A DNA stretch of 64,000 bases, taken from positions 310,001 to 374,000 of IMG/VR virus record IMGVR_UViG_3300044957_000763. One strand, given 5' to 3'. Shown here piece by piece: positions 19,137 through 56,586 of the stretch (positions within the stretch are counted from its first letter, which is position 1; each line of letters opens with the position of its first letter). Made by a program: the position numbers and the translations under genes. Below the pieces are notes generated by a model. The model was not told the DNA's origin, ran no database searches, and was given only the letters and a program-made list of their open reading frames with translations.

Positions 19137-19193
19137 ATCCACCGGCCCCGGAACTTCGGTTCCGGGGTAAACTGTTTTTGTGAGGAACTTCAA

Positions 19194-19598
19194 ATGAACC
19201 AATCCTTTGTAATCATGGCCCCATACTGGGACTACAACGACGAATACAGTTACACTGTTGGCGAAGGTTCGGGCAGTCCGGTTGCGGTTTTTGCAGACCG
19301 GGCGCAAGCCGATGCCGAATGTGAACGACTTGAACTCGCGGCCTGGCGAATGAATCTCCAAGGTGAATCCATTGGTGGTTGGATGTGGGACTCATACGGT
19401 TATATGGTTGGTGGTGACGAAGACGAAGCCAAGGCTAAGTTGCGCGCCGCTTTTCCAGACGACTATGAACCCGATGAGGACATTGACCTTGATGACTTCA
19501 TGGTTCCAAGTAAGTTGACCGACGCGCAAGTCAATGTCCTGCGCGACGTGTTTTCGTGGATTTACTTCAATCACGTGGTTGTGGTAGAATCACACTGA
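19194..19598 (+). CDS. acidic hypothetical protein, paralogue of 19616..20032
   Basis: Shared YNDE...PVAVF...L(T/S)D.Q. Confidence 0.8.
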   Translation: MNQSFVIMAPYWDYNDEYSYTVGEGSGSPVAVFADRAQADAECERLELAAWRMNLQGESIGGWMWDSYGYMVGGDEDEAKAKLRAAFPDDYEPDEDIDLDDFMVPSKLTDAQVNVLRDVFSWIYFNHVVVVESH

Positions 19599-19615
19599 CA
19601 TTCAGGAGATAAACA

Positions 19616-20032
19616 ATGCCATTCATCGTAACTGAAACCCATTACGAATACAACGACGAGACCTACAACTCGCCTGATGCTGAACACGGCAAGGAACCGG
19701 GTGTTCCTGTTGCTGTGTTCAGCAATCGCAATGATGCCGAAAGTGACCGTTGGGCGCGAGAAATCAACCACTGGCGCGACAATGACGAACTTGGAGGTTA
19801 TGTCTACGAAATCAGCGAAGGCGAACCTTGGAGTGGTTCCAGTCGGTATCAGGAAGAACTTGACAAGTACAATGAAAAGCGTCGCAAGTTCGCTGATATC
19901 ACAGGAGTAGACCCGCTGACTGTTGAGTTTGGATATGAATTCGAGATGCCAACCGGGCTCTCTGATACTCAAATCCGAGAAGTCATCGAACTGTTCGAAG
20001 GTCCACACTTCTACAATGTGTTCGAGGTCTAA
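19616..20032 (+). CDS. acidic hypothetical protein, paralogue of 19194..19598
   Basis: Same pattern; AGGAG SD. Confidence 0.8.
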   Translation: MPFIVTETHYEYNDETYNSPDAEHGKEPGVPVAVFSNRNDAESDRWAREINHWRDNDELGGYVYEISEGEPWSGSSRYQEELDKYNEKRRKFADITGVDPLTVEFGYEFEMPTGLSDTQIREVIELFEGPHFYNVFEV

Positions 20033-20034
20033 CC

Positions 20035-20241
20035 ATGACAAAACCAATGCTGAAGTTGATTCAGGATGCCCGTGAGGCAGGACTCAATGTAAGCGAGAAA
20101 GAAAACTTCGTGTCTGTGAAGCGTGGTAGTGTTATTGTCATTTTTTGGAATGACGGCACTATCCACCGAGGAGACGTGGAACTGGCTTTGGCCTCGAAAA
20201 TGACCCAGAAAATGGCACGCCAAGCACTGGGTTTGTCGTAA
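20035..20241 (+). CDS. hypothetical protein
   Basis: ORF ending just before motif 20245. Confidence 0.7.
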   Translation: MTKPMLKLIQDAREAGLNVSEKENFVSVKRGSVIVIFWNDGTIHRGDVELALASKMTQKMARQALGLS

Positions 20242-20298
20242 TCCCGGCCCCGGAGCTTGATGCTCTGGGGTCTTTTCATTCGGAGACATCAAAAAACC

Positions 20299-21339
20299 AT
20301 GAGTCACTTTGTAACAGCAGTGTTCGCTCCAACGAACATCGCAACTAACCCGACCCTCCTTGAGAGGTATTTGGAAGATAAGCTCGCACCTTTTGACGAA
20401 AATCTTCAGGTGGACGAGTACGACCGCGACTGCCACTGCATCGGTAACGCCGCGAGAATAGCGGCGCGTGAAAAGGCGGATGCCGAGTTTGGGACGATTG
20501 AATCGTTGCGAGATTCGTTTTCCGCCTTGGTGCTGACCGATGGCCGTTGTGTTGGCGATATGCAGAAGCGCAACAGTGAGCTGATGTTTGCAATAAGCAT
20601 CAGTGAAGAGGAGAAATCAGAGTATCAAGCCCTGGATTCTGAACTTGATAAGCTCTGGAAGGGGCATATCACACGACGGAACGATGCTGAGAAGCAATAC
20701 TTCGATACCCACCCGATGAAGGATGCCCCAGACCCTACTTGTGGTTTCTATTCTGGTGAACGACAAGACTGGTGGGGTGAAGGTGTCAAAGAAGGAGACC
20801 GATACAGCGATGGGTCTGGTTGCGGAGCCACTGGCACATATCGTTCGACATACAACCCTGATGCCCAGTGGGACTGGTGGGTGATTGGAGGCCGATGGAA
20901 TGGCTGGCTTGCACCACCAGAAGCACAGCCTGAGAAAGACCCAGACAACTGGGAAACCTGCTGGTTGTGCAACGGCACTGGTATGCGAAATGATGACCTC
21001 GGTCAAAAAGCGCGCGAGGCCGACCCGACGTACACCTGCAATGGTTGTGGTGGCAATGGCAAGAGTGTGGTGTGGCCGAGCGAACAAAAGGATTCGGGCT
21101 ACAATGTTGTTTCTCCGAAATACATTGAGTCTCTGGGTCTGATTGGCGACCTGCCCACGCCTTATGCTTTTATTGACCTTAATGGTGAATGGCATCAGAA
21201 GGGTGATATGGGTTGGTGGGGTATGTCGAGTAACGAAAAGGACAGAGATGCGTGGGTCGAAGAGTGGCGCACTGCTCTTGCCGACATCAGCGATGGTGTG
21301 GATGGTTTTCGTGTCGTCGTTGTCGATATGCACATCTAA
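20299..21339 (+). CDS. conserved phage protein (YNP..WDWW.IGGRW type) with inserted DnaJ-like CxxCxGxG zinc finger
   Basis: MSHF start, YNPDAQWDWWVIGGRW, CWLCNGTG, CNGCGGNG, GWWG, VDMHI end. Confidence 0.8.
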   Translation: MSHFVTAVFAPTNIATNPTLLERYLEDKLAPFDENLQVDEYDRDCHCIGNAARIAAREKADAEFGTIESLRDSFSALVLTDGRCVGDMQKRNSELMFAISISEEEKSEYQALDSELDKLWKGHITRRNDAEKQYFDTHPMKDAPDPTCGFYSGERQDWWGEGVKEGDRYSDGSGCGATGTYRSTYNPDAQWDWWVIGGRWNGWLAPPEAQPEKDPDNWETCWLCNGTGMRNDDLGQKAREADPTYTCNGCGGNGKSVVWPSEQKDSGYNVVSPKYIESLGLIGDLPTPYAFIDLNGEWHQKGDMGWWGMSSNEKDRDAWVEEWRTALADISDGVDGFRVVVVDMHI

Positions 21340-21390
21340 CGACCTGGCCCCGGAACTTCGGTTCCGGGGCTTTTTTGATAGGAGATAGAT

Positions 21391-21918
21391 ATGCCAAACT
21401 GGGTTGAAAATCAACTAAAAATTTCAGGAGAACCTGAACATCTCACTGCATTGCGTGAATTTATCTCAGGTACAAACAGCGACGGGGAACCCTTGATGTT
21501 TGACTTTGAGAAAGTAATTCCGACTCCAGAGGAACTTGCATTGACAAATGCTCCAAATACTGTCAATGCTCAAGAGATGATTGACAAATATGGTCATGCA
21601 GACTGGTATGAATTCCGTTACAAACGATGGGGGACTAAATGGAACCTGCATGACAATCCTGAAATCATCGACACCAGCGATACAGTGCTGAAAATCAGTT
21701 TTGACACAGCATGGTGGCCGCCTGATGGTGTCATCGCAGAACTGTCTGTGCGATTCCCGCAACTCCGTTTTGAGTTGTGGTCATGTGACCCTGCAATAGA
21801 CTGGGCGTTTTATATGGAGTTCGACTTAGGTAGTGTGATTCTATTCGAAGAAGTGCCCTATGACCAGGAAATCAAAGAGATGTTTGGTCACGAAGATTGG
21901 GATGATGACTATGAATAA
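21391..21918 (+). CDS. YubB/DUF1281-like ferredoxin-fold protein
   Basis: MPNW..N.L, FDFEKVIP.P, WGTKW, FDTAW.PP. Confidence 0.75.
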   Translation: MPNWVENQLKISGEPEHLTALREFISGTNSDGEPLMFDFEKVIPTPEELALTNAPNTVNAQEMIDKYGHADWYEFRYKRWGTKWNLHDNPEIIDTSDTVLKISFDTAWWPPDGVIAELSVRFPQLRFELWSCDPAIDWAFYMEFDLGSVILFEEVPYDQEIKEMFGHEDWDDDYE

Positions 21919-21956
21919 CCGGCCCCGGAACCGAAGTTCCAGGGCTTTTTTGCACC

Positions 21957-22148
21957 ATGCTAACGCACGAACAAGAAACCGATTACAAGCTCCCCGATGG
22001 TGAATCCTGTTGGATTACCGTTGGTGAGCTTAGTATTTACATCTCGAATGGAGCTGGCGTCAGCGGCCAGATTATCGAGGTGTACCCGCTAGGCAAAGAA
22101 GCCGAAGACCCTTTGCAGGCCATTCAACTGGAGTCACTACTACAATGA
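21957..22148 (+). CDS. hypothetical protein
   Basis: Motif +37. Confidence 0.7.
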   Translation: MLTHEQETDYKLPDGESCWITVGELSIYISNGAGVSGQIIEVYPLGKEAEDPLQAIQLESLLQ

Positions 22149-22537
22149 GCGAAACCGCATACGAGAAAGCAAAACGCGAAAGTGAAGAGAACATGAAGAA
22201 ACTCGGCCGCGTTTGGAATCCAATTGTCTGCGACATTCCCGAGGATGCTTGGGAACCAGTGGGCGATTTCGACAAAGATGAAAACGGGAACATCATCGAC
22301 GCCCGGACCAAACTCAAGGTTTGTATGAGGCTGTCCGGCATCATGATGCACGTCGAGGCCATCGAGGTTTACGAAGTCGAGAGTGGCTCGGAAGCTGGAT
22401 TCTTGAAGGCTACCAATCCGTATCTCGAAGTAGACGTTGAACGCATCTGGGCCATTGCTGGTTGGGAAGGCGACAGTCCTGACTTACTGGAGGTCCAGGG
22501 TCGTCAATACCTGCTCACGATGTTTCCGTTCGCATAA
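22145..22537 (+). CDS. hypothetical protein
   Basis: ATGA overlap. Confidence 0.75.
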   Translation: MSETAYEKAKRESEENMKKLGRVWNPIVCDIPEDAWEPVGDFDKDENGNIIDARTKLKVCMRLSGIMMHVEAIEVYEVESGSEAGFLKATNPYLEVDVERIWAIAGWEGDSPDLLEVQGRQYLLTMFPFA

Positions 22538-22579
22538 CCACCGGCCCCGGAACTTCGGTTCCGGGGCACACAAACCATT

Positions 22580-23059
22580 ATGATTCACATGATTGAGGTC
22601 GATTTCGCGAGCCCTGTGCTACGCAAGTTGATGACTTCCGACCGCACCATACAAGAAGACGAGCAGATGCTCGCCATCTTTAATGGTGTCCCTGAGAACC
22701 ACACGTTCGTTGACACTTATGGACCACAGTCTATTTTCGCCCAGATTGGGTTGAGCTGGTGGCGCGATGTGGTTCCTCGACTCGATGAGGATTTCGTTCT
22801 AGGCCCAGAGGAATGCAATGCAGTTTCACAGATGCTCATGAATGCTATGCCGCCTTCACCTACAAAGGTGATTCAGGCAATGGGCGATGGTACTGAGCTT
22901 GCACACTGTGTCGAGCAATATCCTGAGGCCAACGTAATTCGAGACCCGTCTTTGCCATATGACGCAGACGAAATTGCCACTTTGTTCTTCAAATTGGGCC
23001 AGCTCACTGGCTTCTTTTTCAATGGACACAGGGGCAACGGCATCGTTGTCTCACCATAG
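22580..23059 (+). CDS. hypothetical protein
   Basis: Motif +38; followed by a terminator. Confidence 0.75.
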   Translation: MIHMIEVDFASPVLRKLMTSDRTIQEDEQMLAIFNGVPENHTFVDTYGPQSIFAQIGLSWWRDVVPRLDEDFVLGPEECNAVSQMLMNAMPPSPTKVIQAMGDGTELAHCVEQYPEANVIRDPSLPYDADEIATLFFKLGQLTGFFFNGHRGNGIVVSP

Positions 23060-23064
23060 TTACT

Positions 23065-23094
23065 GGGCGTGCTCTTCGGAGCACGCCCTTTTTT
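23065..23094 (+). terminator. intrinsic terminator
   Basis: GGGCGTGCTC-TTCG-GAGCACGCCC + T tract. Confidence 0.85.
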
Positions 23095-23452
23095 GTTTCC
23101 GGGTTTATATAAATCCGGCTTTAATCCCGGATAAATATATAAATAGGCCTGGTTATAAATCCATTAATAACTGGTTTGAACCTAAATTAAATGGCCGAGC
23201 TGCACGCTCGCGGACCGGTCCGGCGATTAATTTCGAGCCCAGAATCACAAATCGAGGCGATTTCGAGCCGCGTAGGTTCAAAATCTTATTTTTTTGAGGC
23301 CAGGTAATTAGTGGATTAATTAGTTATATAGGGGTAATTAGTGGATTTAATCTAGTTGACTTGCCTGGACCAGCCAGGGCCAGCGTGCTCCGCCGGCTGT
23401 CAAGCTGAAAAATCCGGCCCCGGAACTACATTGAGGCCGGTTTAGGTTCAGC

Positions 23453-23938
23453 ATGACCGAGCTCAGACGACAACTCGAATGGATTGCAGGCCTCGGAAAC
23501 GAACTGCGCGGCATCGGCGCATATGAGCGATTCGTCCTGAAACACGGATACGAATTCTCTGGTGCCATCGAAATCCCAGAACATGTCCAGCGCGGAGAGA
23601 TGAAGTTATGTTTTGGTAACGCAGCCTTGGTGGCCCTGGCGTTCCCAGAAGAGTTCATCTACACCGAAGGATATGCATGGCAAGAAGGAATACCAATCAC
23701 TTTGGCCCATGGTTGGATTATCAATCGACAGGGCCAAGTTATCGACCCCACATGGGGCACTGATAAGTGCGTCGACTACTTCGGCGTGCTCGTGAAACCC
23801 GAATATGTTCGGCCTCGAGCTGGACTTTCAATGATTGACGACTGGCAGAACGGCTGGCCGTTAATCCAGTCAGAAACGCCTGAAGACCACCTCGTCGAAC
23901 TTGAGCAGTGGATTTCGGGCTCCGGCCCCGGAGCTTGA
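23453..23938 (+). CDS. conserved hypothetical protein (C..NA...Y.EG.A...HGW...DPTW, transglutaminase-like triad)
   Basis: Motif +38; CFGNA, YTEGYA, AHGW, IDPTW. Confidence 0.7.
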   Translation: MTELRRQLEWIAGLGNELRGIGAYERFVLKHGYEFSGAIEIPEHVQRGEMKLCFGNAALVALAFPEEFIYTEGYAWQEGIPITLAHGWIINRQGQVIDPTWGTDKCVDYFGVLVKPEYVRPRAGLSMIDDWQNGWPLIQSETPEDHLVELEQWISGSGPGA

Positions 23939-23987
23939 TTAAGCCCCGAATTTTGAATCAAATCGGTTAGAAACCGAGAGCACGCTT

Positions 23988-25169
23988 ATGGAAACAACTA
24001 CGAAAACGATTAGGTACAATGAGGCTGTGAAAAGCCTCCCTGACGAGATTAAGGTTGAGGATTTGAAAGCCAATCCTGGAAACTACCACGCACGACAGCT
24101 CCGTAATATCGTGGTAGCCTACGGTATTGGTGATGCAAAGTGGCGCAACCTTGCACCTAAGGACGAACTGATTCAGGCACTTCAGGAGAACTTCCCTAAT
24201 GGTGTCATCAAGGTTCTGAAGGCTGGCGATGAGGTCGTAAAGACCACAGGCACACCAGCGAAGCCGAAAGTCGAAATGCCGGCACCGACGAACATCCTTC
24301 CTGGCTTGTTCATCCCTGCCGAAGATGAGTCTTTCGTCTTTGATTCAAACCTGCGTTCGTACTTGTCCGCTCTGCGACGTATGTCTCAACTTACCAAGCA
24401 AGAAGAGGCAGATGGTGTCAGAAAGGACATTATGAACACCTTGCTGGTCGGACCACAGGGATGCGGTAAGACTTCGGTGGCTTATGAGTTCGCCGCAAAG
24501 ACGGGGATGCCTTTGCTGAAGATGAACTGCCCGCTGGTTCGCGAACCCCGTGACTGGTTCGGTGCAAAACGTGCCGAAAACGGTTCGGTGTTCTGGGATA
24601 AGGCTTTGTTCGCTGAGGCAATCGCCCAAGGTGGTTTGGTCGTCCTTTTGGACGAAATCACTCGCGCAACTCCGAACGTACTGAACTCGCTTCTGCCTCT
24701 TCTGGACTGGACGCGAGAATCGTACATCGAAGAAGCCAAGGAGAAGCTGAAGGTTGGACCAAGGACTTTCTTCTTCGCAACCGCCAACATCGGTGCGCAA
24801 TTCACAGGCACTTTCAAGCTGGACTCGGCTTTGGCTGACCGGTTTGGTGCAATTGTGGAATGCTCGTTCTTGCCTGAGCAAGACGAATCCGAATTGCTGG
24901 TTAAGCGAAGTGGCATCTCGCAAGATGTTGCGAATCGCCTGGTCAGGGTGGCTAACATGGTGCGAAATGAGAATCAGACTAGCGGTAAGCTGACTGAGAC
25001 GATTTCAACCCGTGTCCTTCTTGACGTGGCACGACTGTACGTTCCTCTCAAGGAGACGGCTTTTCGGTTCACGATTTTGCCGAAATTCTCTGCTGATGGT
25101 GGAAAGCAGTCCGAACGAGCGCAAGTCATTGCGTTCATTCAGGGTCAGTTCCCCAATCTTGTTCTCTAA
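23988..25169 (+). CDS. MoxR/CbbQ/CobS-type AAA+ ATPase
   Basis: Walker A GPQGCGKT, Walker B LLDEITR, ATAN, ALADRF, ISTR. Confidence 0.9.
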   Translation: METTTKTIRYNEAVKSLPDEIKVEDLKANPGNYHARQLRNIVVAYGIGDAKWRNLAPKDELIQALQENFPNGVIKVLKAGDEVVKTTGTPAKPKVEMPAPTNILPGLFIPAEDESFVFDSNLRSYLSALRRMSQLTKQEEADGVRKDIMNTLLVGPQGCGKTSVAYEFAAKTGMPLLKMNCPLVREPRDWFGAKRAENGSVFWDKALFAEAIAQGGLVVLLDEITRATPNVLNSLLPLLDWTRESYIEEAKEKLKVGPRTFFFATANIGAQFTGTFKLDSALADRFGAIVECSFLPEQDESELLVKRSGISQDVANRLVRVANMVRNENQTSGKLTETISTRVLLDVARLYVPLKETAFRFTILPKFSADGGKQSERAQVIAFIQGQFPNLVL

Positions 25170-25264
25170 TCGGAACGGGGTTGAGCTGACCCCGAACCGA
25201 CGTGCTCAAAACGGGGTCGGCTATGCCGGCCCCGTAACTACAAAACCCAAGGAAAACAAGAATC

Positions 25265-49959: not shown

Positions 49960-50304
49960 ATGGACGCATTCACCCAAGCATACATCGAAGCACTACTGTG
50001 GTCGTCTTCTGGCGACCATGGGTCACCACTGGGGAAGGAAGCCAACGTCAGCGAAATCAGCCCGGAACTGATGTCTCGGATTGAATCTGATTGCAAGAAC
50101 TTTCAGCTATTCAACTCCGAGCACTTCGATGGAGACTACAAACAAGCTGGCCACGACTTCGCACTCACGAGAAACCGAGTCGGTACCGGCTTCTGGGACG
50201 GAGACTGGCCAGAACCTGCTGCCACGCTACTCACCGATGCGGCACGTGCCGTTGGTGAACTCGAGTTGTACCGTGGCGACGATGGTCTCATCTACGCACT
50301 GTAA
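49960..50304 (+). CDS. conserved phage protein (AGHDF.LTRN..G.GFWD type)
   Basis: Motif +38. Confidence 0.8.
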   Translation: MDAFTQAYIEALLWSSSGDHGSPLGKEANVSEISPELMSRIESDCKNFQLFNSEHFDGDYKQAGHDFALTRNRVGTGFWDGDWPEPAATLLTDAARAVGELELYRGDDGLIYAL

Positions 50305-50347
50305 ACGAACCGGCCCCGGAGTTTGAACTCCGGGGCTTTTTTTATTC

Positions 50348-51040
50348 ATGTTCCACACATTCACTCAAAAACACGACGATGAGCGAGGGTATTCGGGCTG
50401 GGTGCTCGATGCTAAGCCGTATTTCGACCCCATGAATGGGGCAGGTGTGGCACACGATGTGCTCGAAGAGATGCCGCACGGTGGAGAACAGCCACACGAC
50501 GAACTGATTGCACTTGGTGCTGCGATTTTCGGCCGAGCTAGTCTTTCTGGTGCATTCAACAATCGACCCGCTTCCGAGGTGCTTTCATATGAGTTTAGCG
50601 AACTGTTTCGCCATGCTTTCAATGAAGACCACTATTGGCTTAGTCCAGCACCCAAAACATTAAGACTAGACCAGGGTCGCTATGGTGAAGACTACGAACG
50701 AGAAGAGGCTATTATTCAAGCCGTCGGACCACTTGTACTCGAATACATCGACAAGTACGGTGCGGATGAGTTTAGCGACAATGAAGACAATCTCGAAGAG
50801 GCACGGGCGTGGATACCACATGCTCAAAACTGGCTTCGAATCGGCTTCAGACGGGCACGCCGACGCTTTTACCCACACATGGACGGGTGCGATGTTGCGT
50901 TCATGTTTGAGCGCATTGAGCGAGAAGTAGAAGCACTTAAAGGCGTAGAACTTGGCGACCGATTGACCATACAAGTCAAGTACCAACGCAACGACCTTAA
51001 ACTATGGCATACGCCATACTACGAACTGCCTCAGTGGTAA
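50348..51040 (+). CDS. hypothetical protein (AHD.LE)
   Basis: Motif +37. Confidence 0.8.
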   Translation: MFHTFTQKHDDERGYSGWVLDAKPYFDPMNGAGVAHDVLEEMPHGGEQPHDELIALGAAIFGRASLSGAFNNRPASEVLSYEFSELFRHAFNEDHYWLSPAPKTLRLDQGRYGEDYEREEAIIQAVGPLVLEYIDKYGADEFSDNEDNLEEARAWIPHAQNWLRIGFRRARRRFYPHMDGCDVAFMFERIEREVEALKGVELGDRLTIQVKYQRNDLKLWHTPYYELPQW

Positions 51041-51084
51041 AACCACCGGTCCCGGAGCTACGGCTTCGGGACTTTTTTCATTTC

Positions 51085-51366
51085 ATGATACACGGTTTCG
51101 ACTGGACACACACACCGAACAAAGAAGACCTCGAACGCGATGAGCAAGCACCGGAAACGTACAGATACTGGAAGAAGTTCCGGTATATTAGAACCGCAAA
51201 GAGATTCGGTATAATCGTACACACCGAGGTAATCACCGTATACGTTCGCACTGAAAGGATTTTCCATACTTTGCTTCGGTGGTGGAATGGAAGCAGTACG
51301 TCGAGCGCACCCCTGAACCCGGGCTTAACGTGGCACTACGCCCCGGCCCCGGATTCGATTTATTGA
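51085..51366 (+). CDS. hypothetical protein
   Basis: Motif +38. Confidence 0.65.
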   Translation: MIHGFDWTHTPNKEDLERDEQAPETYRYWKKFRYIRTAKRFGIIVHTEVITVYVRTERIFHTLLRWWNGSSTSSAPLNPGLTWHYAPAPDSIY

Positions 51367-51382
51367 TTCAATCTAAAACATC

Positions 51383-51787
51383 ATGGGAAGCATCAAACTT
51401 TCACCAAAACACGGGGTAAACCCAAGCATCGCCACTTGCTTCTGGTGCGGAGAAGCCACTAACTCGCTAGTACTGTTTGGCAGATTACCAAACGACCAAG
51501 AAGCGGGCATGTATTGTGGTGCTCTGGATTACGAACCTTGCGACAAGTGCAAGGAAAACTGGTCTCAGGGTATCTTGCTCATCGAGGCTGGTATGTCTCC
51601 ACAATCGGAGAACCAGCCCGAAATGCAGAAGGGCGTATACCCTACTGGTCGATATCTAGTCTTGAAGCCTGAAGCAGTAAACCGTATCTTTACCCCAGAT
51701 GCAGCGGCCGAAATACTGAAGCATCGAAAATGTTTCATGGACTTCGAGACCTTCGGTCAGTTCGTCCCGGTCCCGGAACCCCGATAG
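51383..51787 (+). CDS. zinc-binding phage protein (SPKHGVNP...CFWCG...CDKC)
   Basis: Motif +39. Confidence 0.8.
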   Translation: MGSIKLSPKHGVNPSIATCFWCGEATNSLVLFGRLPNDQEAGMYCGALDYEPCDKCKENWSQGILLIEAGMSPQSENQPEMQKGVYPTGRYLVLKPEAVNRIFTPDAAAEILKHRKCFMDFETFGQFVPVPEPR

Positions 51788-51805
51788 ACGGGGTTCCTTC
51801 AAATC

Positions 51806-52132
51806 ATGGACAAAGTGCTCTACAACCTGCACAAAGCCCGCCCTGGTGTTGGCGGCTTTTACTGCAATTGCTGCAACCCGGCATTTGGTAACTTTAAGGG
51901 TCCGAACTCTCGTTGCCATCGCCAAGCCGCCAAGCGTGCTTTTCGTCGCTCCGAGAAGCAGAAGAACCACAATGCTGGTGCCATTTATCTACACCAGCGG
52001 TTTATTGAGTCTATCCATGAATACAACAATTGTATGATTGATGTTGGTATGGAGCACAAGTGCCTAGAATACAATGTGCTTTTTGGTGTGATTACTAAGC
52101 CGGTCCCGGAACCCGACTTCATCGCTTTCTAA
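51806..52132 (+). CDS. hypothetical protein (CNCC)
   Basis: Motif +38. Confidence 0.65.
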   Translation: MDKVLYNLHKARPGVGGFYCNCCNPAFGNFKGPNSRCHRQAAKRAFRRSEKQKNHNAGAIYLHQRFIESIHEYNNCMIDVGMEHKCLEYNVLFGVITKPVPEPDFIAF

Positions 52133-52139
52133 ACTTACA

Positions 52140-52469
52140 ATGAACATCACAATGAGTCCAATGAATTTCATCGAATTCGACACGACGCCGGCAAACGAAT
52201 CGTGCGTTAGTGTCAGCAAGACCGAGGAATACATGCCTGCAATGCGGGCTGAAGCCAATCGTATGAAGGAGTTGCTTGAAAAGCGGTTCCCTGATGTGAA
52301 TGGGTACTTCACAATCAAGAGCATTACACACGACTTTGGTTCGTACCTCGAGATGCGCTTCTACTACGAGGACAACGACGCAGGCATTAAGGAGATGCAA
52401 CACGTCGAAGCGAACTACCCTCAAACGTGGTTGGACGCCGAACCCGTTTTGCTGTACGCCACGACTTAA
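52140..52469 (+). CDS. conserved phage protein (HDFGSY.E type)
   Basis: Motif +39. Confidence 0.75.
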   Translation: MNITMSPMNFIEFDTTPANESCVSVSKTEEYMPAMRAEANRMKELLEKRFPDVNGYFTIKSITHDFGSYLEMRFYYEDNDAGIKEMQHVEANYPQTWLDAEPVLLYATT

Positions 52470-52514
52470 AACCCAACCGGCCCCGGAGCTACCGCTCCGG
52501 GGCTTTTTTCATTC

Positions 52515-52835
52515 GTGCTAAAACTTCCAAGCAACATCCCTCTGCTCTATGCCACTAAAAAAGTGGATGCTGACCACAAGACCATCCACGCTCGCCTGTT
52601 TGCTCTCGGTTGTAACGCAACCTGGTTGATTGCGGAGTATGACCCCAAGAAAAAACTGGCTTACGGCTATTGTGACCTATACGGTCAAGGTCGAGAAGGT
52701 GGTGCTGAATGGGGGTACGTCTCCATCGAAGAACTGGAATCGCTCAAGTTCATGGGCATTCCCCGTGTCGAGGTTGACGCGCACTTCACACCCAAGCCGT
52801 TCAAGGATTGCGTGCGACCTGACGGTCGCATCTAA
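52515..52835 (+). CDS. DUF2958-like protein
   Basis: ATWLIAEYD...YG.CDL...EWGYVSIEEL...E.D.HF; GTG at motif +37. Confidence 0.75.
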   Translation: MLKLPSNIPLLYATKKVDADHKTIHARLFALGCNATWLIAEYDPKKKLAYGYCDLYGQGREGGAEWGYVSIEELESLKFMGIPRVEVDAHFTPKPFKDCVRPDGRI

Positions 52836-52881
52836 ACAAACCCCGGTCCCGGAACCAAAGTTTCGGGAACTTTTTTCATTC

Positions 52882-53052
52882 ATGCCGAAAACAAAGAAAC
52901 GCTGGTATATCAAGTTTCCGCTCGATGCTTACGCACTTGGACCCATTGAGGCAGATAGCGAAGCCGATGCGCGGCGCTGGGCACGAGAGTTCTCCGGCGT
53001 CAAGCGATTGCCTGCCGGGTTCGAGTGTTGGGAAACCGGTCCCGGATTTTAA
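52882..53052 (+). CDS. hypothetical protein
   Basis: Motif +38. Confidence 0.65.
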   Translation: MPKTKKRWYIKFPLDAYALGPIEADSEADARRWAREFSGVKRLPAGFECWETGPGF

Positions 53053-53215
53053 TGGCTAATCACAAACGAAAGAAATGCAAGCGGTCGACCCGTACCATTA
53101 CAGGTAACCGGTCTAACATGACGGGCAACAGCGAAAGCAAAGCATACGGTCACCACAAGGCTGGAGTGCGATGCGCTCGAAACGTCCGCAACAGACTCAC
53201 ACAGGAGGAACTATA

Positions 53216-53401
53216 ATGCCAGTTGAAATCGGACTTGCTGATGCTATCGAAGAGGTGCTGCGCACTGGTGCTGCCGACATCTACTACGATTCCTCGTTCG
53301 ATACCACGGAGGACATCGCAGAAGGCGCAACACACTCCAAAGGTGTCCAAAGACACCAGGAAGCACTGCAACGTCTCAAAGAGGCGTATAACAGCCAATA
53401 A
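53216..53401 (+). CDS. hypothetical protein
   Basis: GGAGG SD; TAATG overlap. Confidence 0.65.
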   Translation: MPVEIGLADAIEEVLRTGAADIYYDSSFDTTEDIAEGATHSKGVQRHQEALQRLKEAYNSQ

Positions 53402-53443
53402 GAGCCGGCCCCGGAAATCCGGGGTTGGCCAATCTATTCAACC

Positions 53444-53698
53444 ATGCCGAAACCAAGAAAGCCAATTCGTGTAAGTCACACACCACCACTCCGACCAGGG
53501 TGGTATGCGTATAGCCACTGTGGTGGCGAGTTTGAAGCAGTCAAGCTGGCACAAGCTGACGTAGACGACGCACAAAGCCGCTATAAGTTATCCGTATTGC
53601 TCGACTTACCTTTTGTCGATGTCTGGAGCACGCGAAAGCTGAAGAAGCGCGAGTATGATTGCAACCGGTCCCAGAATCACTCAACTTGTGCGGCATAA
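53444..53698 (+). CDS. hypothetical protein
   Basis: Motif +38. Confidence 0.65.
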   Translation: MPKPRKPIRVSHTPPLRPGWYAYSHCGGEFEAVKLAQADVDDAQSRYKLSVLLDLPFVDVWSTRKLKKREYDCNRSQNHSTCAA

Positions 53699-53704
53699 CC
53701 CATC

Positions 53705-53875
53705 ATGGTAATCAGCTTCAAGTGCCCACATTGCAAGGAACAAGTGCCACGTGACATCAAGCAAAGAACGCGTGGAACGCGATATGCCATTCTGTTTGAC
53801 TGCCCTCGATGCCGGAGAACAATTCACATCGAGGGAATCGCCCAACAATCGCCGCCTAAGGTTGTAAAACTGTAG
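53705..53875 (+). CDS. 56-aa zinc-ribbon protein
   Basis: Manual ORF with CPHC...CPRC; variant motif CGGTCCCAGA 39 nt upstream. Confidence 0.65.
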   Translation: MVISFKCPHCKEQVPRDIKQRTRGTRYAILFDCPRCRRTIHIEGIAQQSPPKVVKL

Positions 53876-53914
53876 GCGGCCCCGGAAAACAAAAACCCAG
53901 AAAACAAAAACATC

Positions 53915-54265
53915 ATGCGAAAAGCATTAACGCTCATCGAGCTACTTATCGCCACATTCATCGCCGCTATCTTGATTACGGTGATACTTGCCGGAATTCG
54001 TGGTTGCACCACCCAAGGTGTCGCTGCAGAAGACTCTATGCGGGAGTATGTAAGCAGGCTGTATCCTGGCCGCGAGGTCATTGGTGTTGCTTGCACCAAC
54101 ATGGACACTGACGGCGACGGTTACATCAGTTGCACCGCAACCATCGACATCGACAACGGACCGAATGTCGTGGAAAGACAAATCAATGCCCAGTGTGCAA
54201 CAGGACTCTTGTCCTTCAACAGTGGTTGTAAGGCTGCGATTCCTCAAGCATATCCACAACAGTAA
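53915..54265 (+). CDS. prepilin-type N-terminal cleavage/methylation domain protein
   Basis: MRKA|LTLIELLIA (E+5), hydrophobic helix, Cys residues, DTDGDG; motif +38. Confidence 0.7.
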   Translation: MRKALTLIELLIATFIAAILITVILAGIRGCTTQGVAAEDSMREYVSRLYPGREVIGVACTNMDTDGDGYISCTATIDIDNGPNVVERQINAQCATGLLSFNSGCKAAIPQAYPQQ

Positions 54266-54308
54266 CCTACCGGCCCCGGAGTTCCGTGCTCCGGGGCTTT
54301 TCTCATTC

Positions 54309-54503
54309 ATGCCAAGTTGCGAACGCTGCCAAAAGCCAACAAACGTCACAATTATGTCCATGTTCAATACCCAAACCATTTGCATGGACTGCAAGGACTC
54401 GGAGAAGAAACATCCGAAGTACAAAGAGGCACAGCAAGCCGAACTTGAAGCCGTAAAAGCCAATAACTACAACTTCCAAGGAATCGGATTTCCGGGCAAC
54501 TGA
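54309..54503 (+). CDS. small zinc-finger phage protein (C.RC...MSMFNT..IC..C)
   Basis: Motif +38. Confidence 0.75.
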   Translation: MPSCERCQKPTNVTIMSMFNTQTICMDCKDSEKKHPKYKEAQQAELEAVKANNYNFQGIGFPGN

Positions 54504-54544
54504 ACCCGGCCCCGGAAGCCCAAATCAGGGCAACATTACACATC

Positions 54545-54697
54545 ATGAGCAAGAAGCAAAAAGCACAAAAGCCCGCCTACACCCCGGTGCCCTTCACACG
54601 GGCACACTCCAAGCCACATCGACTTGAGGAGAACAGTCGTGCCCGACGAAAGCGCGAAGAACGCGATGCCAAGAACGGCAACTGGAGACAGGATTGA
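54545..54697 (+). CDS. 50-aa basic peptide
   Basis: Manual ORF at motif +38; TTGA overlap with next gene. Confidence 0.6.
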   Translation: MSKKQKAQKPAYTPVPFTRAHSKPHRLEENSRARRKREERDAKNGNWRQD

Positions 54698-55065
54698 TAA
54701 CTGAGTTCAAAGGTGAAAGGGGACAATTCTCAGTATGCCATGATGGTGAAACGCGGAGTCTTCAGGCTATCGTGTATGCATTGGAACCACCGGATGAGTT
54801 CGGAGTCAAACACAAGGAACCAATTGACTGGCGATTAAGTGAGAAAAATCATTCACCGACCGGCCTTGAATGGGGATATGGTGGCTCCGGACCAAGCCAA
54901 CTTGCATGGTGTCTGCTTCGTGAATGTGGACTGACAAAACCCCAGACAGAAGCACTCTATATGCGATTCAAAGCAGATGTAATAGCTAACCTGCCGCGAG
55001 AAGGCTTTACCCTGACAAAGAAACAAGTGATGGACTGGGTCAAGAAAAGCGGCCCCGGAAAGTAA
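54694..55065 (+). CDS. DUF6166-like protein
   Basis: HSPTGLEWGYGGSGPSQLA. Confidence 0.75.
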   Translation: MITEFKGERGQFSVCHDGETRSLQAIVYALEPPDEFGVKHKEPIDWRLSEKNHSPTGLEWGYGGSGPSQLAWCLLRECGLTKPQTEALYMRFKADVIANLPREGFTLTKKQVMDWVKKSGPGK

Positions 55066-55086
55066 ACCGTGGCATACTCATCAAGC

Positions 55087-55362
55087 ATGCCACGATACAC
55101 ACTCGACACACCAAGTCAGCACTTGCTGAACCAGAAGGATAAGGACATCACCTACTACGGTATCCTGCTGGACGGCAGGGTGCAGATTACTGGTGCCCTG
55201 TTTAATAGCAAGGCACAAGTTGTCAAGGCTATCAAAAAGCTCAACAATGCCATCGAGCAAGGCTTGCCCAAGGTAGAGGTCGAAATTCATCGCGGAATGT
55301 ACTTGTGGGACTTGCAAGAGCACAATCAAGGCATACCCGTAAAAGGTGTGGAAGTGTCCTGA
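55087..55362 (+). CDS. hypothetical protein
   Basis: Motif +37. Confidence 0.65.
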   Translation: MPRYTLDTPSQHLLNQKDKDITYYGILLDGRVQITGALFNSKAQVVKAIKKLNNAIEQGLPKVEVEIHRGMYLWDLQEHNQGIPVKGVEVS

Positions 55363-55430
55363 CTGTGGACACTCTGTCACCAAATGAAACAATCGGTCCC
55401 GGAGCTTAGGCTCCGGGACTTTTTTGCTTT

Positions 55431-55730
55431 ATGAGAAACATCCTCACGAGAAAAGTCTTGTTTCCAGTATGGTTGCTGTGCTTACTGGTCATGGCTGATA
55501 CAGCATGGACTATTTGGGTTGTCCATCGCGAACTAGCTATCGAAGCCAATCCACTGATGGCACACCTGGTCAATTACAATGTGCCAGCTTTTGTTGCCAT
55601 CAAAACTAGTGTTGTGCTTGCGTTTGCCGTAATGCTCGAACTCATACCCGACCAACGACGCAAGAACAGATTCGCACATACAGCATTTGGATTGTTTGTT
55701 GTGCTATACTGTATCTGGAGTATTTGTTAA
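55431..55730 (+). CDS. DUF5658-like membrane protein
   Basis: D...T......EANPLM......F...K; motif +37. Confidence 0.7.
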   Translation: MRNILTRKVLFPVWLLCLLVMADTAWTIWVVHRELAIEANPLMAHLVNYNVPAFVAIKTSVVLAFAVMLELIPDQRRKNRFAHTAFGLFVVLYCIWSIC

Positions 55731-55774
55731 AAATTCGGCCCCGGAATCCCAAAACAACACAAACCCAAAAGAGT

Positions 55775-55984
55775 ATGAAGAAAATTCAACGCATCGCCAC
55801 TACCCTTGGTATTCCGGCGAATGAAATCACCAAAGCCGAGCGTAAAGCTATTCAAAAAGCCAACTCGGCCACTGAAGTTTGTCGAATACTTGGGGTCGAA
55901 GTCGCCGGTAATGTACAATATGTGCAAGCCGCTATGAAGCGACCGAAGAAAAAGAAAACGCAGGTGTATGCGTATGCCGCGTAA
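55775..55984 (+). CDS. small basic protein
   Basis: Motif +39. Confidence 0.65.
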   Translation: MKKIQRIATTLGIPANEITKAERKAIQKANSATEVCRILGVEVAGNVQYVQAAMKRPKKKKTQVYAYAA

Positions 55985-56170
55985 AGGAGGACACAAATGA
56001 CACTACAAAGCTCAGGATGTATGTTCATTCTTGGAATGATATTCTGTGGAATTTTCTGGGGTGGACAAGGCGTGTTTTGGTGGGTGATTGCAAGCATCAT
56101 CATAACCATTTTGGAATCCGATAAAATCTAAGCGACCCCGGAACCACCAAGACCACTGAATCAACAAATC

Positions 56171-56545
56171 ATGTGGAAAACACAGCAACAAGCCGACACC
56201 TTCAACCGATGCCTTGATGGCGCAAAGCAGACAGGATTCAACGGTTGTATCACTTATGCCAACAAAGCAGACGCTGACAAGGCTTGCGCCACGCTCGTGC
56301 CGACGATTGATGAGGCGTATGAACTAACAGCCCATCAGGGCAAAGTCTATGCCGAAGTCAACCAAGAGTACATGAGCGAACCACGTTTGCGAGTTACAGG
56401 GTTTCTCGAAGCTATCATCGACACCAACCCGGTGAGTGCCGAGTTTGAAGCCGAGGGCGAGGATGGTGAGCAGTATCAGATACACTTTGAGTCTGGCAAA
56501 TGGGTGCTACTTCAACGCCCTTACAACTTCACAGAGGTAGCCTAA
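56171..56545 (+). CDS. hypothetical protein
   Basis: Variant motif +38. Confidence 0.75.
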   Translation: MWKTQQQADTFNRCLDGAKQTGFNGCITYANKADADKACATLVPTIDEAYELTAHQGKVYAEVNQEYMSEPRLRVTGFLEAIIDTNPVSAEFEAEGEDGEQYQIHFESGKWVLLQRPYNFTEVA

Positions 56546-56586
56546 GATGCGGTCCCGGAACTTCGGTTCCGGGACTTTTTTTATTC

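What the first reader, a model, noticed from the sequence alone, without database searches (positions are those of the whole stretch)
19143..56585. The decamer doubles as one arm of the upstream gene's terminator, with compensatory changes
Seen: about a third of copies continue as a hairpin, CCCCGGARC-loop-GYTCCGGGG, often followed by a T tract that ends a few nt before the next ATG (21345, 28358, 36020, 36839, 38654, 50311, 52478). T-variant copies carry the matching change, GTCCCGG...CCGGGAC (42833, 43378, 44464, 46430, 55394, 56550). Loops are mostly C-TTCG-G or C-TACG-G, the established extra-stable cUNCGg RNA tetraloops. Elsewhere the motif is the 3' arm (10841, 35442), spans stem and loop (17221, 27184), or has no hairpin. 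Inference: the linear motif is the primary constraint, and terminators were built from it several times. The result is ~37-nt terminator+promoter junctions that insulate the units.
Basis: partly seen in the sequence, partly recalled or inferred. Interest (0 to 1): 0.72.

Follow-up and report, generated by a model that had tools for sequence, protein, structure and literature searches.

The report
Promoter motif reused as terminator arm
In a 49-kb block of a 479-kb lake-water phage, a 10-base promoter-like motif sits 37-38 bases before almost every start codon, and in about 38% of copies it also forms one arm of an RNA hairpin ending the upstream gene; related phages confirm the compensatory changes, but no RNA data exist.

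Summary
CGG[C/T]CCCGGA occurs 80 times on the + strand and nowhere else on that strand in the 478,840-bp phage. 58 copies lie exactly 37 or 38 nt before a start codon with no Shine-Dalgarno. 30 of 80 copies pair with a downstream complement, against 0.5 expected. C-variants pair with G (17/17). T-variants pair with A (9), G (2) or neither (2). T runs follow 17 of 30 hairpins but only 2 of 46 other copies.

Related phage contigs keep a hairpin at orthologous junctions while the stems change in a compensated way. Phages with other motif variants carry matching 3' arms. Non-Watson-Crick pairs are mostly G.U, and half the loops are cUNCGg. Both point to selection on the + strand RNA.

Best reading: the decamer is a -35-like element, probably for the sigma factor encoded just upstream, and it launches leaderless mRNAs. 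The terminators of the upstream genes are fitted onto it. Copying between junctions also blurs "built several times". The closest known analogue is the PeSL promoter-terminator cassette of T4-like phages. Promoter use, start sites and termination remain untested.

The parts
10264..59382 (+). Array of 80 copies of CGG[CT]CCCGGA in a block of about 100 small + strand genes; GC is 0.50-0.53 here against 0.43-0.45 elsewhere in the genome
6232..7089 (+). Sigma-70-family (ECF/SigI-like) factor gene, 285 aa, just upstream of the block; candidate reader of the decamer
   Evidence: Pfam Sigma70_r2 24.9 bits and r4 18.7 bits; TIGR02937 41.3 bits; genome scans; orthologues are syntenic with motif blocks in relatives
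3733..8376 (+). Cluster of genes with host-type extended -10 promoters (TGnTAnWWT) ending 6-7 nt before the ATG, the presumed early leaderless genes; it includes the sigma gene
20245..20280 (+). Decamer as 5' arm, loop TTGAT, tail CTTTTC; the downstream gene starts at 20299 with an SD
21345..21380 (+). Degenerate decamer (TGGCCCCGGA) hairpin with a T6 tract; terminator followed by an SD-led gene
21920..21956 (+). Hairpin with one C.A mismatch plus T6; ATG at +37; the whole junction is absent in relative R
28358..28392 (+). Hairpin (loop ATTA) plus T6
30294..30330 (+). Hairpin (loop TTCG) plus TTTGTTTT
33278..33319 (+). Hairpin GCGCGGCCCCG-taaa-CGGGGTTGCGC plus T6 on a degenerate decamer (CGGCCCCGTA); ATG at +37; the motif is intact in R
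36020..36056 (+). Complete 37-nt junction: decamer, cUACGg hairpin, T6, ATG at 36057
36839..36875 (+). Complete 37-nt junction: cUACGg hairpin plus T6
38654..38690 (+). Complete 37-nt junction: cUUCGg hairpin plus T6; left edge of a gene module that is replaced in relative R
42220..42255 (+). cUACGg hairpin plus TTTCTT, followed by a host-type TGGTATAAT promoter
42833..42869 (+). T-variant junction with a T:A pair, cUUCGg loop and T6; the orthologues in R and L054 have C:G
44464..44500 (+). T-variant hairpin (T:A) plus TTTCTT
46430..46466 (+). T-variant hairpin (T:A), cUACGg loop, T6; the L054 orthologue has C:G
46877..46913 (+). T-variant hairpin (T:A, one G.U) plus TTTCAT
49166..49203 (+). 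T-variant hairpin with an uncompensated T.G wobble, plus T6
50311..50347 (+). C-variant hairpin (GGAGT/ACTCC) plus T7
51047..51084 (+). T-variant hairpin (T:A, one G.U) plus T6
52478..52514 (+). C-variant hairpin (loop TACC) plus T6; GTG start
52844..52881 (+). T-variant hairpin (T:A) plus T6; the L054 orthologue has the GGAACCCCG-type hairpin instead
54271..54308 (+). C-variant hairpin (5-nt loop) plus TTTTCT
55394..55430 (+). T-variant hairpin (T:A) plus T6
56550..56586 (+). T-variant hairpin (T:A), cUUCGg loop, T7
19143..19169 (+). Long hairpin with no adjacent T tract (a T5 lies 7 nt later); SD-led gene downstream
22542..22568 (+). T-less hairpin; the R orthologue has GGAAT/ATTCC (compensated) and is also T-less
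37308..37334 (+). T-less hairpin; the R orthologue has GGAGT/ACTCC (two compensated pairs)
38013..38038 (+). T-less hairpin; the L078 orthologue has T:A where the window and R have C:G
40158..40184 (+). T-less hairpin, conserved in L078
40804..40829 (+). T-less hairpin; the stems differ in R and in L078/L083 (T.G there); right edge of the replaced gene module
41139..41164 (+). T-less hairpin (GGATT/AATCC); relatives have GGAGT/ACTCC
43378..43404 (+). T-variant T-less hairpin; the L054 orthologue has no hairpin
48385..48411 (+). T-variant, 8-bp stem; the variable base is unpaired (T/C)
49922..49948 (+). T-variant T-less hairpin with a T.G wobble
29483..29507 (+). Short hairpin GGCCCCGG/CCGGGGCC; extended to 11 bp in R
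34644..34667 (+). Short hairpin on the decamer, conserved in R
41526..41553 (+). T-variant 8-bp stem (T:A) with a 10-nt loop
53406..53428 (+). Short hairpin CGGCCCCGG/CCGGGGTTG
10828..10853 (+). Decamer as the 3' arm (GAGTCCGGGG...CCCCGGACTC); conserved in R and L022
35430..35454 (+). Decamer as the 3' arm; conserved in R and L078
17214..17241 (+). Decamer spans stem and loop; R keeps a hairpin in a shifted register, with the T-variant
27178..27204 (+). Decamer spans stem and loop; conserved in R
51768..51798 (+). Hairpin GGAACCCCG/CGGGGTTCC, which uses only the 3' end of the decamer
57506..59105 (+). Five further GGAACCC(C)G-type hairpins (57506, 57875, 58488, 58795, 59075); four of them (not 57875) are followed by a conserved leader with an SD

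Best explanation
The window holds a 49-kb accessory-gene block of a 479-kb phage that appears to use the host RNA polymerase.

The decamer CGG[C/T]CCCGGA lies at -37/-38 to -28/-29 relative to the start codon. I read it as a -35-like promoter element, most likely bound by region 4 of the phage sigma factor encoded at 6232-7089. Transcription would start at or within a few bases of the A of the conserved A-T-C-ATG, giving leaderless mRNAs. That would explain why nearly every gene carries its own copy at a fixed distance and has no Shine-Dalgarno.

The stop codon of the upstream gene usually lies 3-9 nt before the decamer, and the next start site is only about 37 nt further on. Any terminator for the upstream transcript must therefore overlap the promoter. 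The solution seen here is that the decamer plus 1-2 further bases forms the 5' arm of an RNA hairpin, with a complementary 3' arm placed in the sequence-free promoter spacer. In about 21 junctions a U tract then fills the AT-rich region at about -14 to -8, making a standard intrinsic terminator that ends some 5-8 nt before the next start.

The motif is fixed by its DNA reader, and the 3' arm evolves to match it.

Shown here: the anatomy, the statistics, and the compensatory evolution within this genome and across relatives. Inferred: promoter activity, which sigma is involved, the leaderless start sites, actual termination, and the role of the ten T-less hairpins. Those may attenuate or pause transcription, or protect 3' ends.
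For: Motif and spacing:
- 80 + strand copies, all inside one block.
- 58 copies lie 37 or 38 nt before a start codon. A-T-C is conserved at -3 to -1, and G is nearly absent from -11 to -1.

Leaderless reading:
- SD-like 4-mers occur before 10 of 65 motif-linked genes against 16 of 33 unlinked genes, p = 7e-4. Three of the four motif-linked GTG-start genes (45417, 45689, 45980) carry an SD-like 4-mer; 52515 does not.
- Copies with longer spacing are followed by an SD.
- Elsewhere in the genome, host-type extended -10 boxes end 6-7 nt before start codons 24 times on the + strand.

Polymerase and sigma:
- No T7-like, beta or beta' polymerase is detectable.
- Four sigma-like genes exist, one of them adjacent to the block.
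- Sigma-70-type promoters are not enriched in 36-56 kb: 13 found, 14.8 expected.
- Sigma orthologues are syntenic with motif blocks in all relatives. The motif changes with sigma divergence: CGGCCTCGGA, CGGCCTAGGA, CGGCCCCAGA.

Hairpins:
- 30 of 80 copies form them against 0.54 expected; covariation at the Y base has p = 8e-6.
- 99.1% of cells are paired, with three pairs showing double changes; 0 of 500 shuffles reach this.
- T runs follow 17 of 30 hairpins against 2 of 46 other copies.
- 21 of the genome's 38 + strand terminator-like sites lie in the block, and 16 of them use the motif.
- Hairpin status agrees in 62 of 67 mapped orthologous junction pairs. At least 9 of 17 hairpin pairs between the window and R differ in the stem with full compensation.
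- G.U outnumbers A.C 12 to 3, and half the loops are UNCG.
- Predicted energies are -21 to -26 kcal/mol, z about -5.
Against: - There are no RNA data. No RNA run was listed. The one read-laying run gave DNA contigs only and no variant letters.
- No recognisable -10 element lies between the decamer and the ATG, only W at -11, -10, -7 and -6. This is unusual for a sigma-70-family promoter.
- Assigning the decamer to this sigma rests on adjacency and co-variation, which overall divergence confounds.
- Ten long hairpins lack a U tract yet are conserved, which intrinsic termination does not explain.
- Identical hairpins between unrelated genes show that the copies are not independent. The covariation counts therefore overstate the number of events.
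Confidence: 0.68

Rival explanations
1. The junctions are mobile or recombining regulatory cassettes, like the PeSLs of T4-like phages. One or a few hairpin-promoter cassettes spread by recombination or gene conversion between junctions. The apparent compensatory changes are then whole-cassette replacements, not stepwise mutation and compensation. This adds to the main explanation more than it excludes it.
For: - Identical 26-nt hairpins sit between unrelated genes (42833, 43378, 44464, 56550; also 36020, 36839, 42220), and only 5 paralogous protein pairs exist in the block.
- Only a handful of stem alleles occur: GGAAC, GGAGC, GGAGT, GGAAT, GGATT.
- 19 of 38 homology breakpoints between the window and relative R lie within 10 nt of a junction, against 2.8 expected by random placement. 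One 2.1-kb module is replaced exactly between junctions 38654 and 40804.
- PeSL precedent: PMC2839356, PMC4122927.
Against: - G.U intermediates exist (49166, 49922, L078 7315). There are no mismatched chimeric stems such as GGAAC...GCTCC, so pairing is still selected.
- Loops and tails differ among otherwise similar hairpins.
- The breakpoint control used random positions, not other intergenic positions, so the enrichment is overstated.
Confidence: 0.45
2. The decamer acts in RNA, not DNA. It would be a site for processing or protein binding, or a translation-start signal placed 27 nt before the AUG in polycistronic transcripts. The hairpins would modulate access to it.
For: - The motif is strictly strand-specific and lies at a fixed distance from the start codon.
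- No -10 element was found.
- The structure is selected at the RNA level.
Against: - In 30 copies the motif would be locked in a -21 to -26 kcal/mol stem, while in 50 it would be single-stranded. One RNA reader is unlikely to accept both.
- U tracts right after the hairpins would end the RNA before the gene it is supposed to serve.
- The motif co-varies with a DNA-binding sigma orthologue.
- The position matches a -35 element if transcription starts at the ATG.
Confidence: 0.1
3. The hairpins are DNA-level promoter features, either extruded hairpins like the early promoters of phage N4 or palindromic binding sites for a dimeric regulator.
For: The inverted repeats overlap the putative promoter, and ten of the hairpins have no U tract.
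Against: - 50 of 80 motif copies have no such repeat.
- G.U outnumbers A.C 12 to 3, which implies only the + strand needs to fold.
- UNCG loops with C-G closing pairs are stabilising in RNA specifically.
- Loop sequence and stem-extension bases vary freely, so no protein-contact pattern is conserved.
- T tracts associate strongly with the hairpins.
Confidence: 0.07

Closest known systems
PeSLs (promoter-early stem-loops), the composite promoter-terminator cassettes in hyperplastic regions of T4-like phages (PMC2839356, PMC4122927)
   Same: - A conserved intergenic cassette combines a promoter with a stem-loop that terminates or attenuates upstream transcription.
- The stem-loop may overlap the -35 or -10 box.
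- G-T pairs occur in the stems.
- The cassettes flank small genes of unknown function.
- Indel and replacement breakpoints between related phages fall at the cassettes (here 19 of 38).
   Different: - PeSLs use the host sigma-70 consensus, span about 100 bp and end with a Shine-Dalgarno. Here the recognition element is a GC-rich decamer unlike sigma-70 boxes, with no sigma-70 promoter enrichment.
- The whole junction here is 37-38 nt with no SD, and appears leaderless.
- The promoter element itself is the 5' arm of the stem, so arm and motif co-evolve.
- No minicircles or reporter assays are available here.
Intrinsic (Rho-independent) terminators of bacterial RNA polymerase
   Same: A GC-rich stem of 10-11 bp, a 3-5 nt loop that is often UNCG, and a run of 6-7 U directly after the stem. 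The sites lie just after stop codons on the coding strand.
   Different: Sixteen of them share one 5' arm sequence dictated by another signal. Ten otherwise identical hairpins lack the U tract and stay that way in relatives.
Phage sigma-factor regulons (SPO1 gp28, phiEco32 gp36; from my own knowledge)
   Same: A phage-encoded sigma-family protein is expressed from host-type promoters, alongside a large set of phage promoters sharing one non-host motif.
   Different: The assignment is untested here. The motif is only a -35-like element with no clear -10, and its density is one per gene.
Leaderless phage transcripts from extended -10 promoters (lambda cI from PRM; Thermus phage P23-45 middle and late genes; from my own knowledge)
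   Same: The start codon is placed where transcription would begin, with no SD. Extended -10 boxes sit 6-7 nt before start codons elsewhere in this genome.
   Different: Here a second, phage-specific promoter class would do the same for about 60 genes in a row. Start sites have not been mapped.
N4 early promoters (DNA hairpin recognised by the virion RNA polymerase; from my own knowledge)
   Same: A short GC-rich hairpin overlaps a conserved promoter sequence.
   Different: In N4 the hairpin is required at every promoter and acts as DNA. Here 62% of copies lack it, and the evidence points to RNA-level pairing.

Membership tests
Intrinsic terminator | Stable GC-rich stem-loop in the transcript | tested here: met
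   10-11 bp stems, -21 to -26 kcal/mol, z about -5. 30 of 80 copies form them against 0.54 by chance.
Intrinsic terminator | U tract immediately 3' of the stem | tested here: inconclusive
   Met at 17 hairpins by T run of 4 or more, about 21 counting TTTCTT-type tails and 21345. Not met at 10 long hairpins.
Intrinsic terminator | Located downstream of a stop codon on the coding strand | tested here: met
   The upstream stop lies 3-9 nt before the decamer at most hairpin junctions.
Intrinsic terminator | RNA 3' ends in the U tract | not testable with these tools
   No RNA run was listed.
Sigma-70-family promoter | -35 element about 35 nt upstream of the start site | tested here: inconclusive
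   The decamer spans -37/-38 to -28/-29 relative to the ATG. The position fits only if transcription starts at the ATG, which has not been mapped.
Sigma-70-family promoter | Conserved -10 element | tested here: not met
   Only W at -11, -10, -7 and -6, plus A-T-C at -3 to -1. There is no hexamer.
Sigma-70-family promoter | A cognate sigma factor that binds the motif | not testable with these tools
   A candidate gene is present at 6232-7089.
PeSL cassettes | Repeated intergenic cassette joining a promoter and a stem-loop | tested here: met
PeSL cassettes | Host sigma-70-like -35/-10 consensus | tested here: not met
   13 sigma-70-like sites against 14.8 expected in 36-56 kb. The motif is unrelated to TTGACA or TATAAT.
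PeSL cassettes | Shine-Dalgarno and ATG at the 3' end of the cassette | tested here: not met
   The ATG is present, but an SD-like 4-mer occurs in only 10 of 65 motif-linked genes.
PeSL cassettes | Breakpoints of gene gain, loss or replacement between related phages lie at the cassettes | tested here: met
   19 of 38 breakpoints lie within 10 nt of a junction, against 2.8 expected. The control was random positions only.
PeSL cassettes | Membership in T4-like myoviruses, and minicircle formation | not tested
   Phage taxonomy was not examined. Minicircles would need deep read data.
N4-type hairpin promoter | Hairpin present at every promoter copy | tested here: not met
   50 of 80 copies lack it.
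cUNCGg tetraloop hairpins | UNCG loop closed by a C-G pair | tested here: met
   15 of 30 hairpins: TTCG 9 times, TACG 6 times.
Leaderless mRNA | 5'-terminal AUG | not testable with these tools
   The support is indirect only: fixed spacing, lack of SD, and host-type extended -10 boxes 6-7 nt before start codons.

The most novel reading that the evidence does not exclude
A family of huge freshwater phages expresses a 50-kb accessory block as about 60-80 monocistronic leaderless mRNAs. The family may infect Armatimonadota. A phage sigma would read a GC-rich -35-like decamer. Because a leaderless gene needs its own promoter, the stop codon, terminator, promoter and start codon are compressed into 37-38 nt. 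This is done by making the promoter element the terminator's 5' arm. The terminator stems therefore co-evolve with the sigma's DNA specificity across the family. Polymerase released at the U tract sits on the next promoter, which would favour immediate re-initiation. The conserved U-less hairpins would be a second, non-canonical class, either attenuators or 3'-end protectors.
Probability: 0.35. Interest if true: 0.78.

Novelty: new variant of a known kind. Interest (0 to 1): 0.62.

Why it matters
Composite promoter-terminator cassettes are already known from T4-like phages. Here the two signals are not just adjacent: they share the same bases. That produces a natural experiment in which a DNA-recognition motif and an RNA structure constrain each other, and the outcome can be followed across related phages whose motif has drifted.

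If the leaderless reading is right, this is an unusually clean case of one promoter per gene being forced by the mode of translation initiation. It also suggests a minimal 37-nt part that ends one transcription unit and starts the next, which would interest synthetic biologists.

The conserved hairpins without a U tract are a concrete handle on non-canonical termination or RNA stabilisation in a little-studied host lineage.

All of this is prediction from sequence. It needs transcript-end mapping.

Tried and rejected
- RNA evidence: no RNA run was listed for the stretch. The single read-laying run on four DNA runs showed no variant letters. Contigs simply break, or cross-align, at the repeated junctions. 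The one \"joint\" (36048 to 37306) has only 26 letters on one side, and I read it as cross-alignment of junction copies.\n- Sigma region 4 folded with decamer DNA: the tool did not fold it, so it counts as no evidence.\n- Close relatives in the phage collection and IMG/VR: megablast found none. The hairpin pattern gave 4 unrelated single hits. The sigma search gave one weak hit.\n- Metagenome scan for the hairpin pattern: this returned over 100 unrelated single palindromic hits, so such GC-rich stems are common in other genomes. Only the multi-copy, one-strand contigs (L054/L083 and L078) are relatives.\n- A second strand-specific GC-rich repeat (TGGCCGGAGGCCGAAC): this turned out to be a 78-nt tandem coding repeat, not a regulatory motif.\n- The two antisense decamers in and beside the sigma gene as a feedback promoter: rejected. 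There is no start codon at the right spacing, and the copies are degenerate in relatives.\n- ATCGAA or GGG as a shared -10-like element: its position is not fixed, and it is absent from the logo of non-hairpin copies.\n- A phage-encoded polymerase: no T7-like, beta or beta' Pfam match. Very divergent enzymes cannot be excluded.

Full report
**What the window is.** The window is bases 310,001-374,000 of a 478,840-bp virus record with direct terminal repeats, judged complete. DNA runs that hold it are lake-water metagenomes. No T7-like polymerase and no beta or beta' homologue was detectable in the genome. Four sigma-70-family genes were found.

**The motif.** The "decamer" is CGG[CT]CCCGGA.
- It occurs 80 times on the + strand, 50 with C and 30 with T, between 10264 and 59382.
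- Only two copies lie on the - strand.
- With one mismatch allowed there are 94 matches against 5.7 expected from shuffles.
- All 80 + strand copies of the whole genome lie in this one 49-kb block.
- The block is also set apart by composition, with GC 0.50-0.53 against 0.43-0.45 elsewhere.
- Its roughly 100 genes are all on the + strand. They are mostly small, with few paralogues, and mostly of unknown function (DUFs, WGR, a ligase, MoxR/VWA, a methyltransferase).

**Spacing and the leaderless reading.**
- In 58 of 80 copies a start codon opening an ORF lies exactly 37 nt (33 copies) or 38 nt (25 copies) after the first base of the motif.
- Between the two, only A-T-C at -3 to -1 is conserved. 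A/T is preferred at -11, -10, -7 and -6, and G is almost absent from -11 to -1. There is no Shine-Dalgarno.
- SD-like 4-mers precede 10 of 65 motif-linked genes against 16 of 33 unlinked genes in the block, p = 7e-4.
- Three of the four motif-linked GTG-start genes (45417, 45689, 45980) carry an SD-like 4-mer. The fourth, 52515, does not.
- Copies with longer spacing (14984, 19143, 28358, 57506 and others) are followed by an SD.
- Outside the block, host-type extended -10 boxes (TGnTAnWWT) end 6 or 7 nt before ORF start codons 24 times on the + strand. This includes the gene cluster at 3.7-8.4 kb just upstream of the block.

Together these findings make it likely that this phage-host pair uses leaderless mRNAs widely, and that the decamer units start at or next to the ATG. 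The decamer would then sit at -37/-38 to -28/-29, the place of a -35 element. This is inference. No RNA run was listed.

**A candidate reader.**
- The ORF at 6232-7089 has sigma-70 region 2 and region 4 (Pfam 24.9 and 18.7 bits). It matches the ECF superfamily model at 41.3 bits, just under the 42.9 cut-off, and SigI models more weakly.
- It lies in the cluster with host-type promoters, 3 kb before the first decamer.
- Its homologues are always syntenic with a motif block, and the motif drifts with the sigma:

| Sigma identity to the window's | Motif |
|---|---|
| 77% | CGGCCCCGGA |
| 57% | CGGCCTCGGA |
| 58% | CGGCCTAGGA |
| 46% | CGGCCCCAGA mixed with CGGCCCCGGA |

- The predicted region 4.2 helix differs among these groups and is identical within the first. 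This is suggestive only, because overall divergence confounds it.
- Sigma-70-type promoters are not enriched in 36-56 kb: 13 against 14.8 expected.

**The hairpins.**
- Requiring only that motif positions 5-10 pair with a downstream complement, 30 of 80 copies qualify. Shuffled tails give 0.54 per 80, with a maximum of 5 in 2000 trials.
- The typical form is GG[C/T]CCCGGA(R)(C) - 3-5 nt loop - (G)(Y)TCCGGG[G/A]C(U). It has 10-11 pairs at -21 to -26 kcal/mol, z about -5. A non-hairpin junction folds at -4.3 kcal/mol, z = +0.4.
- The partner of the variable base was scored without using that pair as a criterion. For C it is G in 17 of 17. For T it is A in 9, G in 2, C in 1 and T in 1. Fisher p = 8e-6.
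- An alignment of 28 standard-geometry hairpins has 99.1% of cells paired. Three pairs show changes on both sides: C:G/U:A at the Y base, A:U/G:C, and C:G/U:A. No shuffle out of 500 reached the observed score. That alignment was selected for pairing, so the percentage paired is by construction, and its rows are not independent events.
- Loops are TTCG (9) or TACG (6) with a C-G closing pair in 15 of 30 hairpins.
- Further geometries exist. There are short stems GGCCCCGG/CCGGGGCC (29483, 34644, 53406). There is also a family using only the last bases of the motif, GGAACCCCG/CGGGGTTCC (51768 and 57506-59075).

**Terminator features.**
- A T run of at least four follows 17 of 30 hairpins but only 2 of 46 hairpin-less copies, p = 3e-7. 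Counting TTTCTT-type tails and the degenerate copy at 21345 gives about 21.
- At these junctions the upstream stop codon lies 3-9 nt before the motif, and the T run ends 5-8 nt before the ATG.
- A simple genome-wide scan finds 38 terminator-like sites on the + strand. 21 of them lie in the block, which is a tenth of the genome, and 16 of those use the motif as the 5' arm. Terminators elsewhere each have their own stem sequence.
- The independent scan tool ranks the motif hairpins as the best terminator-like sites in 36-56 kb.
- Ten long hairpins have no T tract (19143, 22542, 37308, 38013, 40158, 40804, 41139, 43378, 48385, 49922).

**Evidence from relatives.** I joined 40 kb of a JGI contig ("R": L030, L034, L035). 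It is colinear with the window at about 80% nucleotide identity. I also recovered two further contigs from the metagenome scan (L054/L083 and L078), a more distant phage (L027), and a block inside a MAG contig ("Arm", L036-L038).
- Hairpin status agrees in 62 of 67 mapped junction pairs: 31 hairpin-hairpin, 31 none-none, 5 discordant.
- At least 9 of the 17 hairpin junctions shared by the window and R differ in the stem, always with both partners changed. Examples:
  - 22542: GGAAC/GTTCC against GGAAT/ATTCC.
  - 37308: GGAAC/GTTCC against GGAGT/ACTCC.
  - 42833: GGTCCCGGAAC/GTTCCGGGAC against GGCCCCGGAGC/GCTCCGGGGC.
- The C/T switch at the Y base has happened at different junctions in different lineages.
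  - It is T:A in the window and C:G in relatives at 42833, 46430, 46877 and 51047.
  - It is T:A in L078 and C:G in the window and R at 38013.
  - G.U intermediates occur at 49166, 49922 and L078 7315.
- The 3' arm follows the motif where the motif differs. In L027, whose motif is CGGCCTCGGA, three hairpins read ...CCTCGGAAY/RTTCCGAGG and one keeps a T.G wobble. In Arm, a CCCAGA copy pairs with TCTGGG.
- Over all four sets, allowing any single non-Watson-Crick pair, G.U occurs 12 times and A.C 3 times. Two of the three A.C are loop-closing positions.

The G.U excess, together with the UNCG loops, points to selection on the + strand RNA and not on a DNA palindrome. Junctions with T-less hairpins are T-less in the relatives too, and they show compensated stem changes. 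They are therefore a conserved class that canonical intrinsic termination does not explain.

**Is the motif primary, and were the terminators built several times?** The motif is clearly primary.
- Most copies have no hairpin.
- The 5' arm is invariant apart from the Y base.
- Stem variation lies in the 3' arm.
- The 3' arm follows the motif across phages.
- Several unrelated geometries exist.
- Orthologous junctions can carry different geometries. For example, W52844 is the standard type, while L054 9745 is the GGAACCCCG type.

However, some hairpins are identical 26-mers between unrelated genes, and only a few stem alleles occur. Copying between junctions must therefore also contribute. In line with this, 19 of 38 homology breakpoints between the window and R fall within 10 nt of a junction, against 2.8 for random positions. 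A 2.1-kb module is replaced exactly between junctions 38654 and 40804. The control did not use other intergenic positions, so this enrichment is an upper estimate.

**Comparison with what is known.** The closest described system is the PeSL of T4-like phages. PeSLs are conserved composite promoter-terminator cassettes in hyperplastic regions. Their stem-loop can overlap the -35 or -10 box, and they mediate modular gene shuffling (PMC2839356; PMC4122927). The present junctions work like PeSLs but fail three of their defining features:
- They do not have the host sigma-70 consensus.
- They have no SD.
- They are about a third of the length.

They add one feature of their own: the promoter element itself is the stem's 5' arm. 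N4-type hairpin promoters are excluded, because most copies have no hairpin. In phiKZ, no leaderless transcript was detected (PMC8244752). I therefore rate this a new variant of a known kind.

**Limits.** Nothing here shows transcription. Promoter activity, the identity of the sigma, the start sites, termination efficiency and the role of the T-less hairpins are all inferred. The absence of a recognisable -10 element is a real weakness of the sigma-promoter model.

Noticed in passing
window 1-1714 (genome 309369-311335): About eleven tandem 78-nt (26-aa) coding repeats carrying TGGCCGGAGGCCGAAC, inside ORFs that include 380-1714. Pfam hits to Phage_FRD3 and DUF982 are weak.
   Followed up: partly
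window 10000-60000 against the rest of the genome: The motif block has GC 0.50-0.53 against 0.43-0.45 elsewhere in the 479-kb genome. It is a compositionally distinct region.
   Followed up: no
window 3733-8376 and genome-wide: Host-type extended -10 boxes (TGnTAnWWT) end 6-7 nt before start codons 24 times on the + strand. This implies leaderless mRNAs from host-type promoters too.
   Followed up: partly
window 6874-6883 and 7309-7318, - strand: Two antisense copies of the decamer lie inside the sigma gene and its neighbour. No start codon sits at the usual spacing, and the copies are degenerate in relatives, so this is probably a coding coincidence.
   Followed up: yes
L032 and L036-L038 (G001:C5:243000-298200): A syntenic relative lies inside a 1.36-Mb contig of a MAG labelled Armatimonadetes. 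It has the radical-SAM activase, the sigma and a 55-kb block with 32 motif copies. The MAG's rpoB is on another contig. Whether this is a prophage, a host clue or mis-binning is unresolved.
   Followed up: partly
window 57506-59105: Four copies (57506, 58488, 58795, 59075) share a conserved leader after a GGAACCCCG-type hairpin: CTAGCAATGTCCCAAGGGACAGGAGG. It contains a second small hairpin and an SD. An in-frame ATG at +36 leaves the true start ambiguous.
   Followed up: no
window 42220-42290: A motif hairpin with tail TTTCTT is followed by a host-type TGGTATAAT box about 10 nt before the ATG at 42289. This would be a host-type promoter inside the block.
   Followed up: no
L030 12936-13532 and L035 13462-13935: Relative R carries GIY-YIG and HNH homing-endonuclease-like ORFs inside the block. 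They are absent from the window.
   Followed up: no
window 9134-9203: A tRNA-Gln (UUG) gene lies just upstream of the first decamer.
   Followed up: no
window 25227, 33283, 38210, 53666, 56133: One-mismatch decamers (CGGCCCCGTA, CGGCCTCGGA, CGGTCCCAGA, CGACCCCGGA) also sit 37-39 nt before start codons. The orthologues of 25227 and 33283 in R have the intact motif.
   Followed up: partly
metagenome scan, L039-L118: Single palindromic GCCCCGGAGC...GCTCCGGGGC-type hairpins are common in unrelated metagenome contigs. The stem sequence alone is therefore not diagnostic of this phage family.
   Followed up: partly
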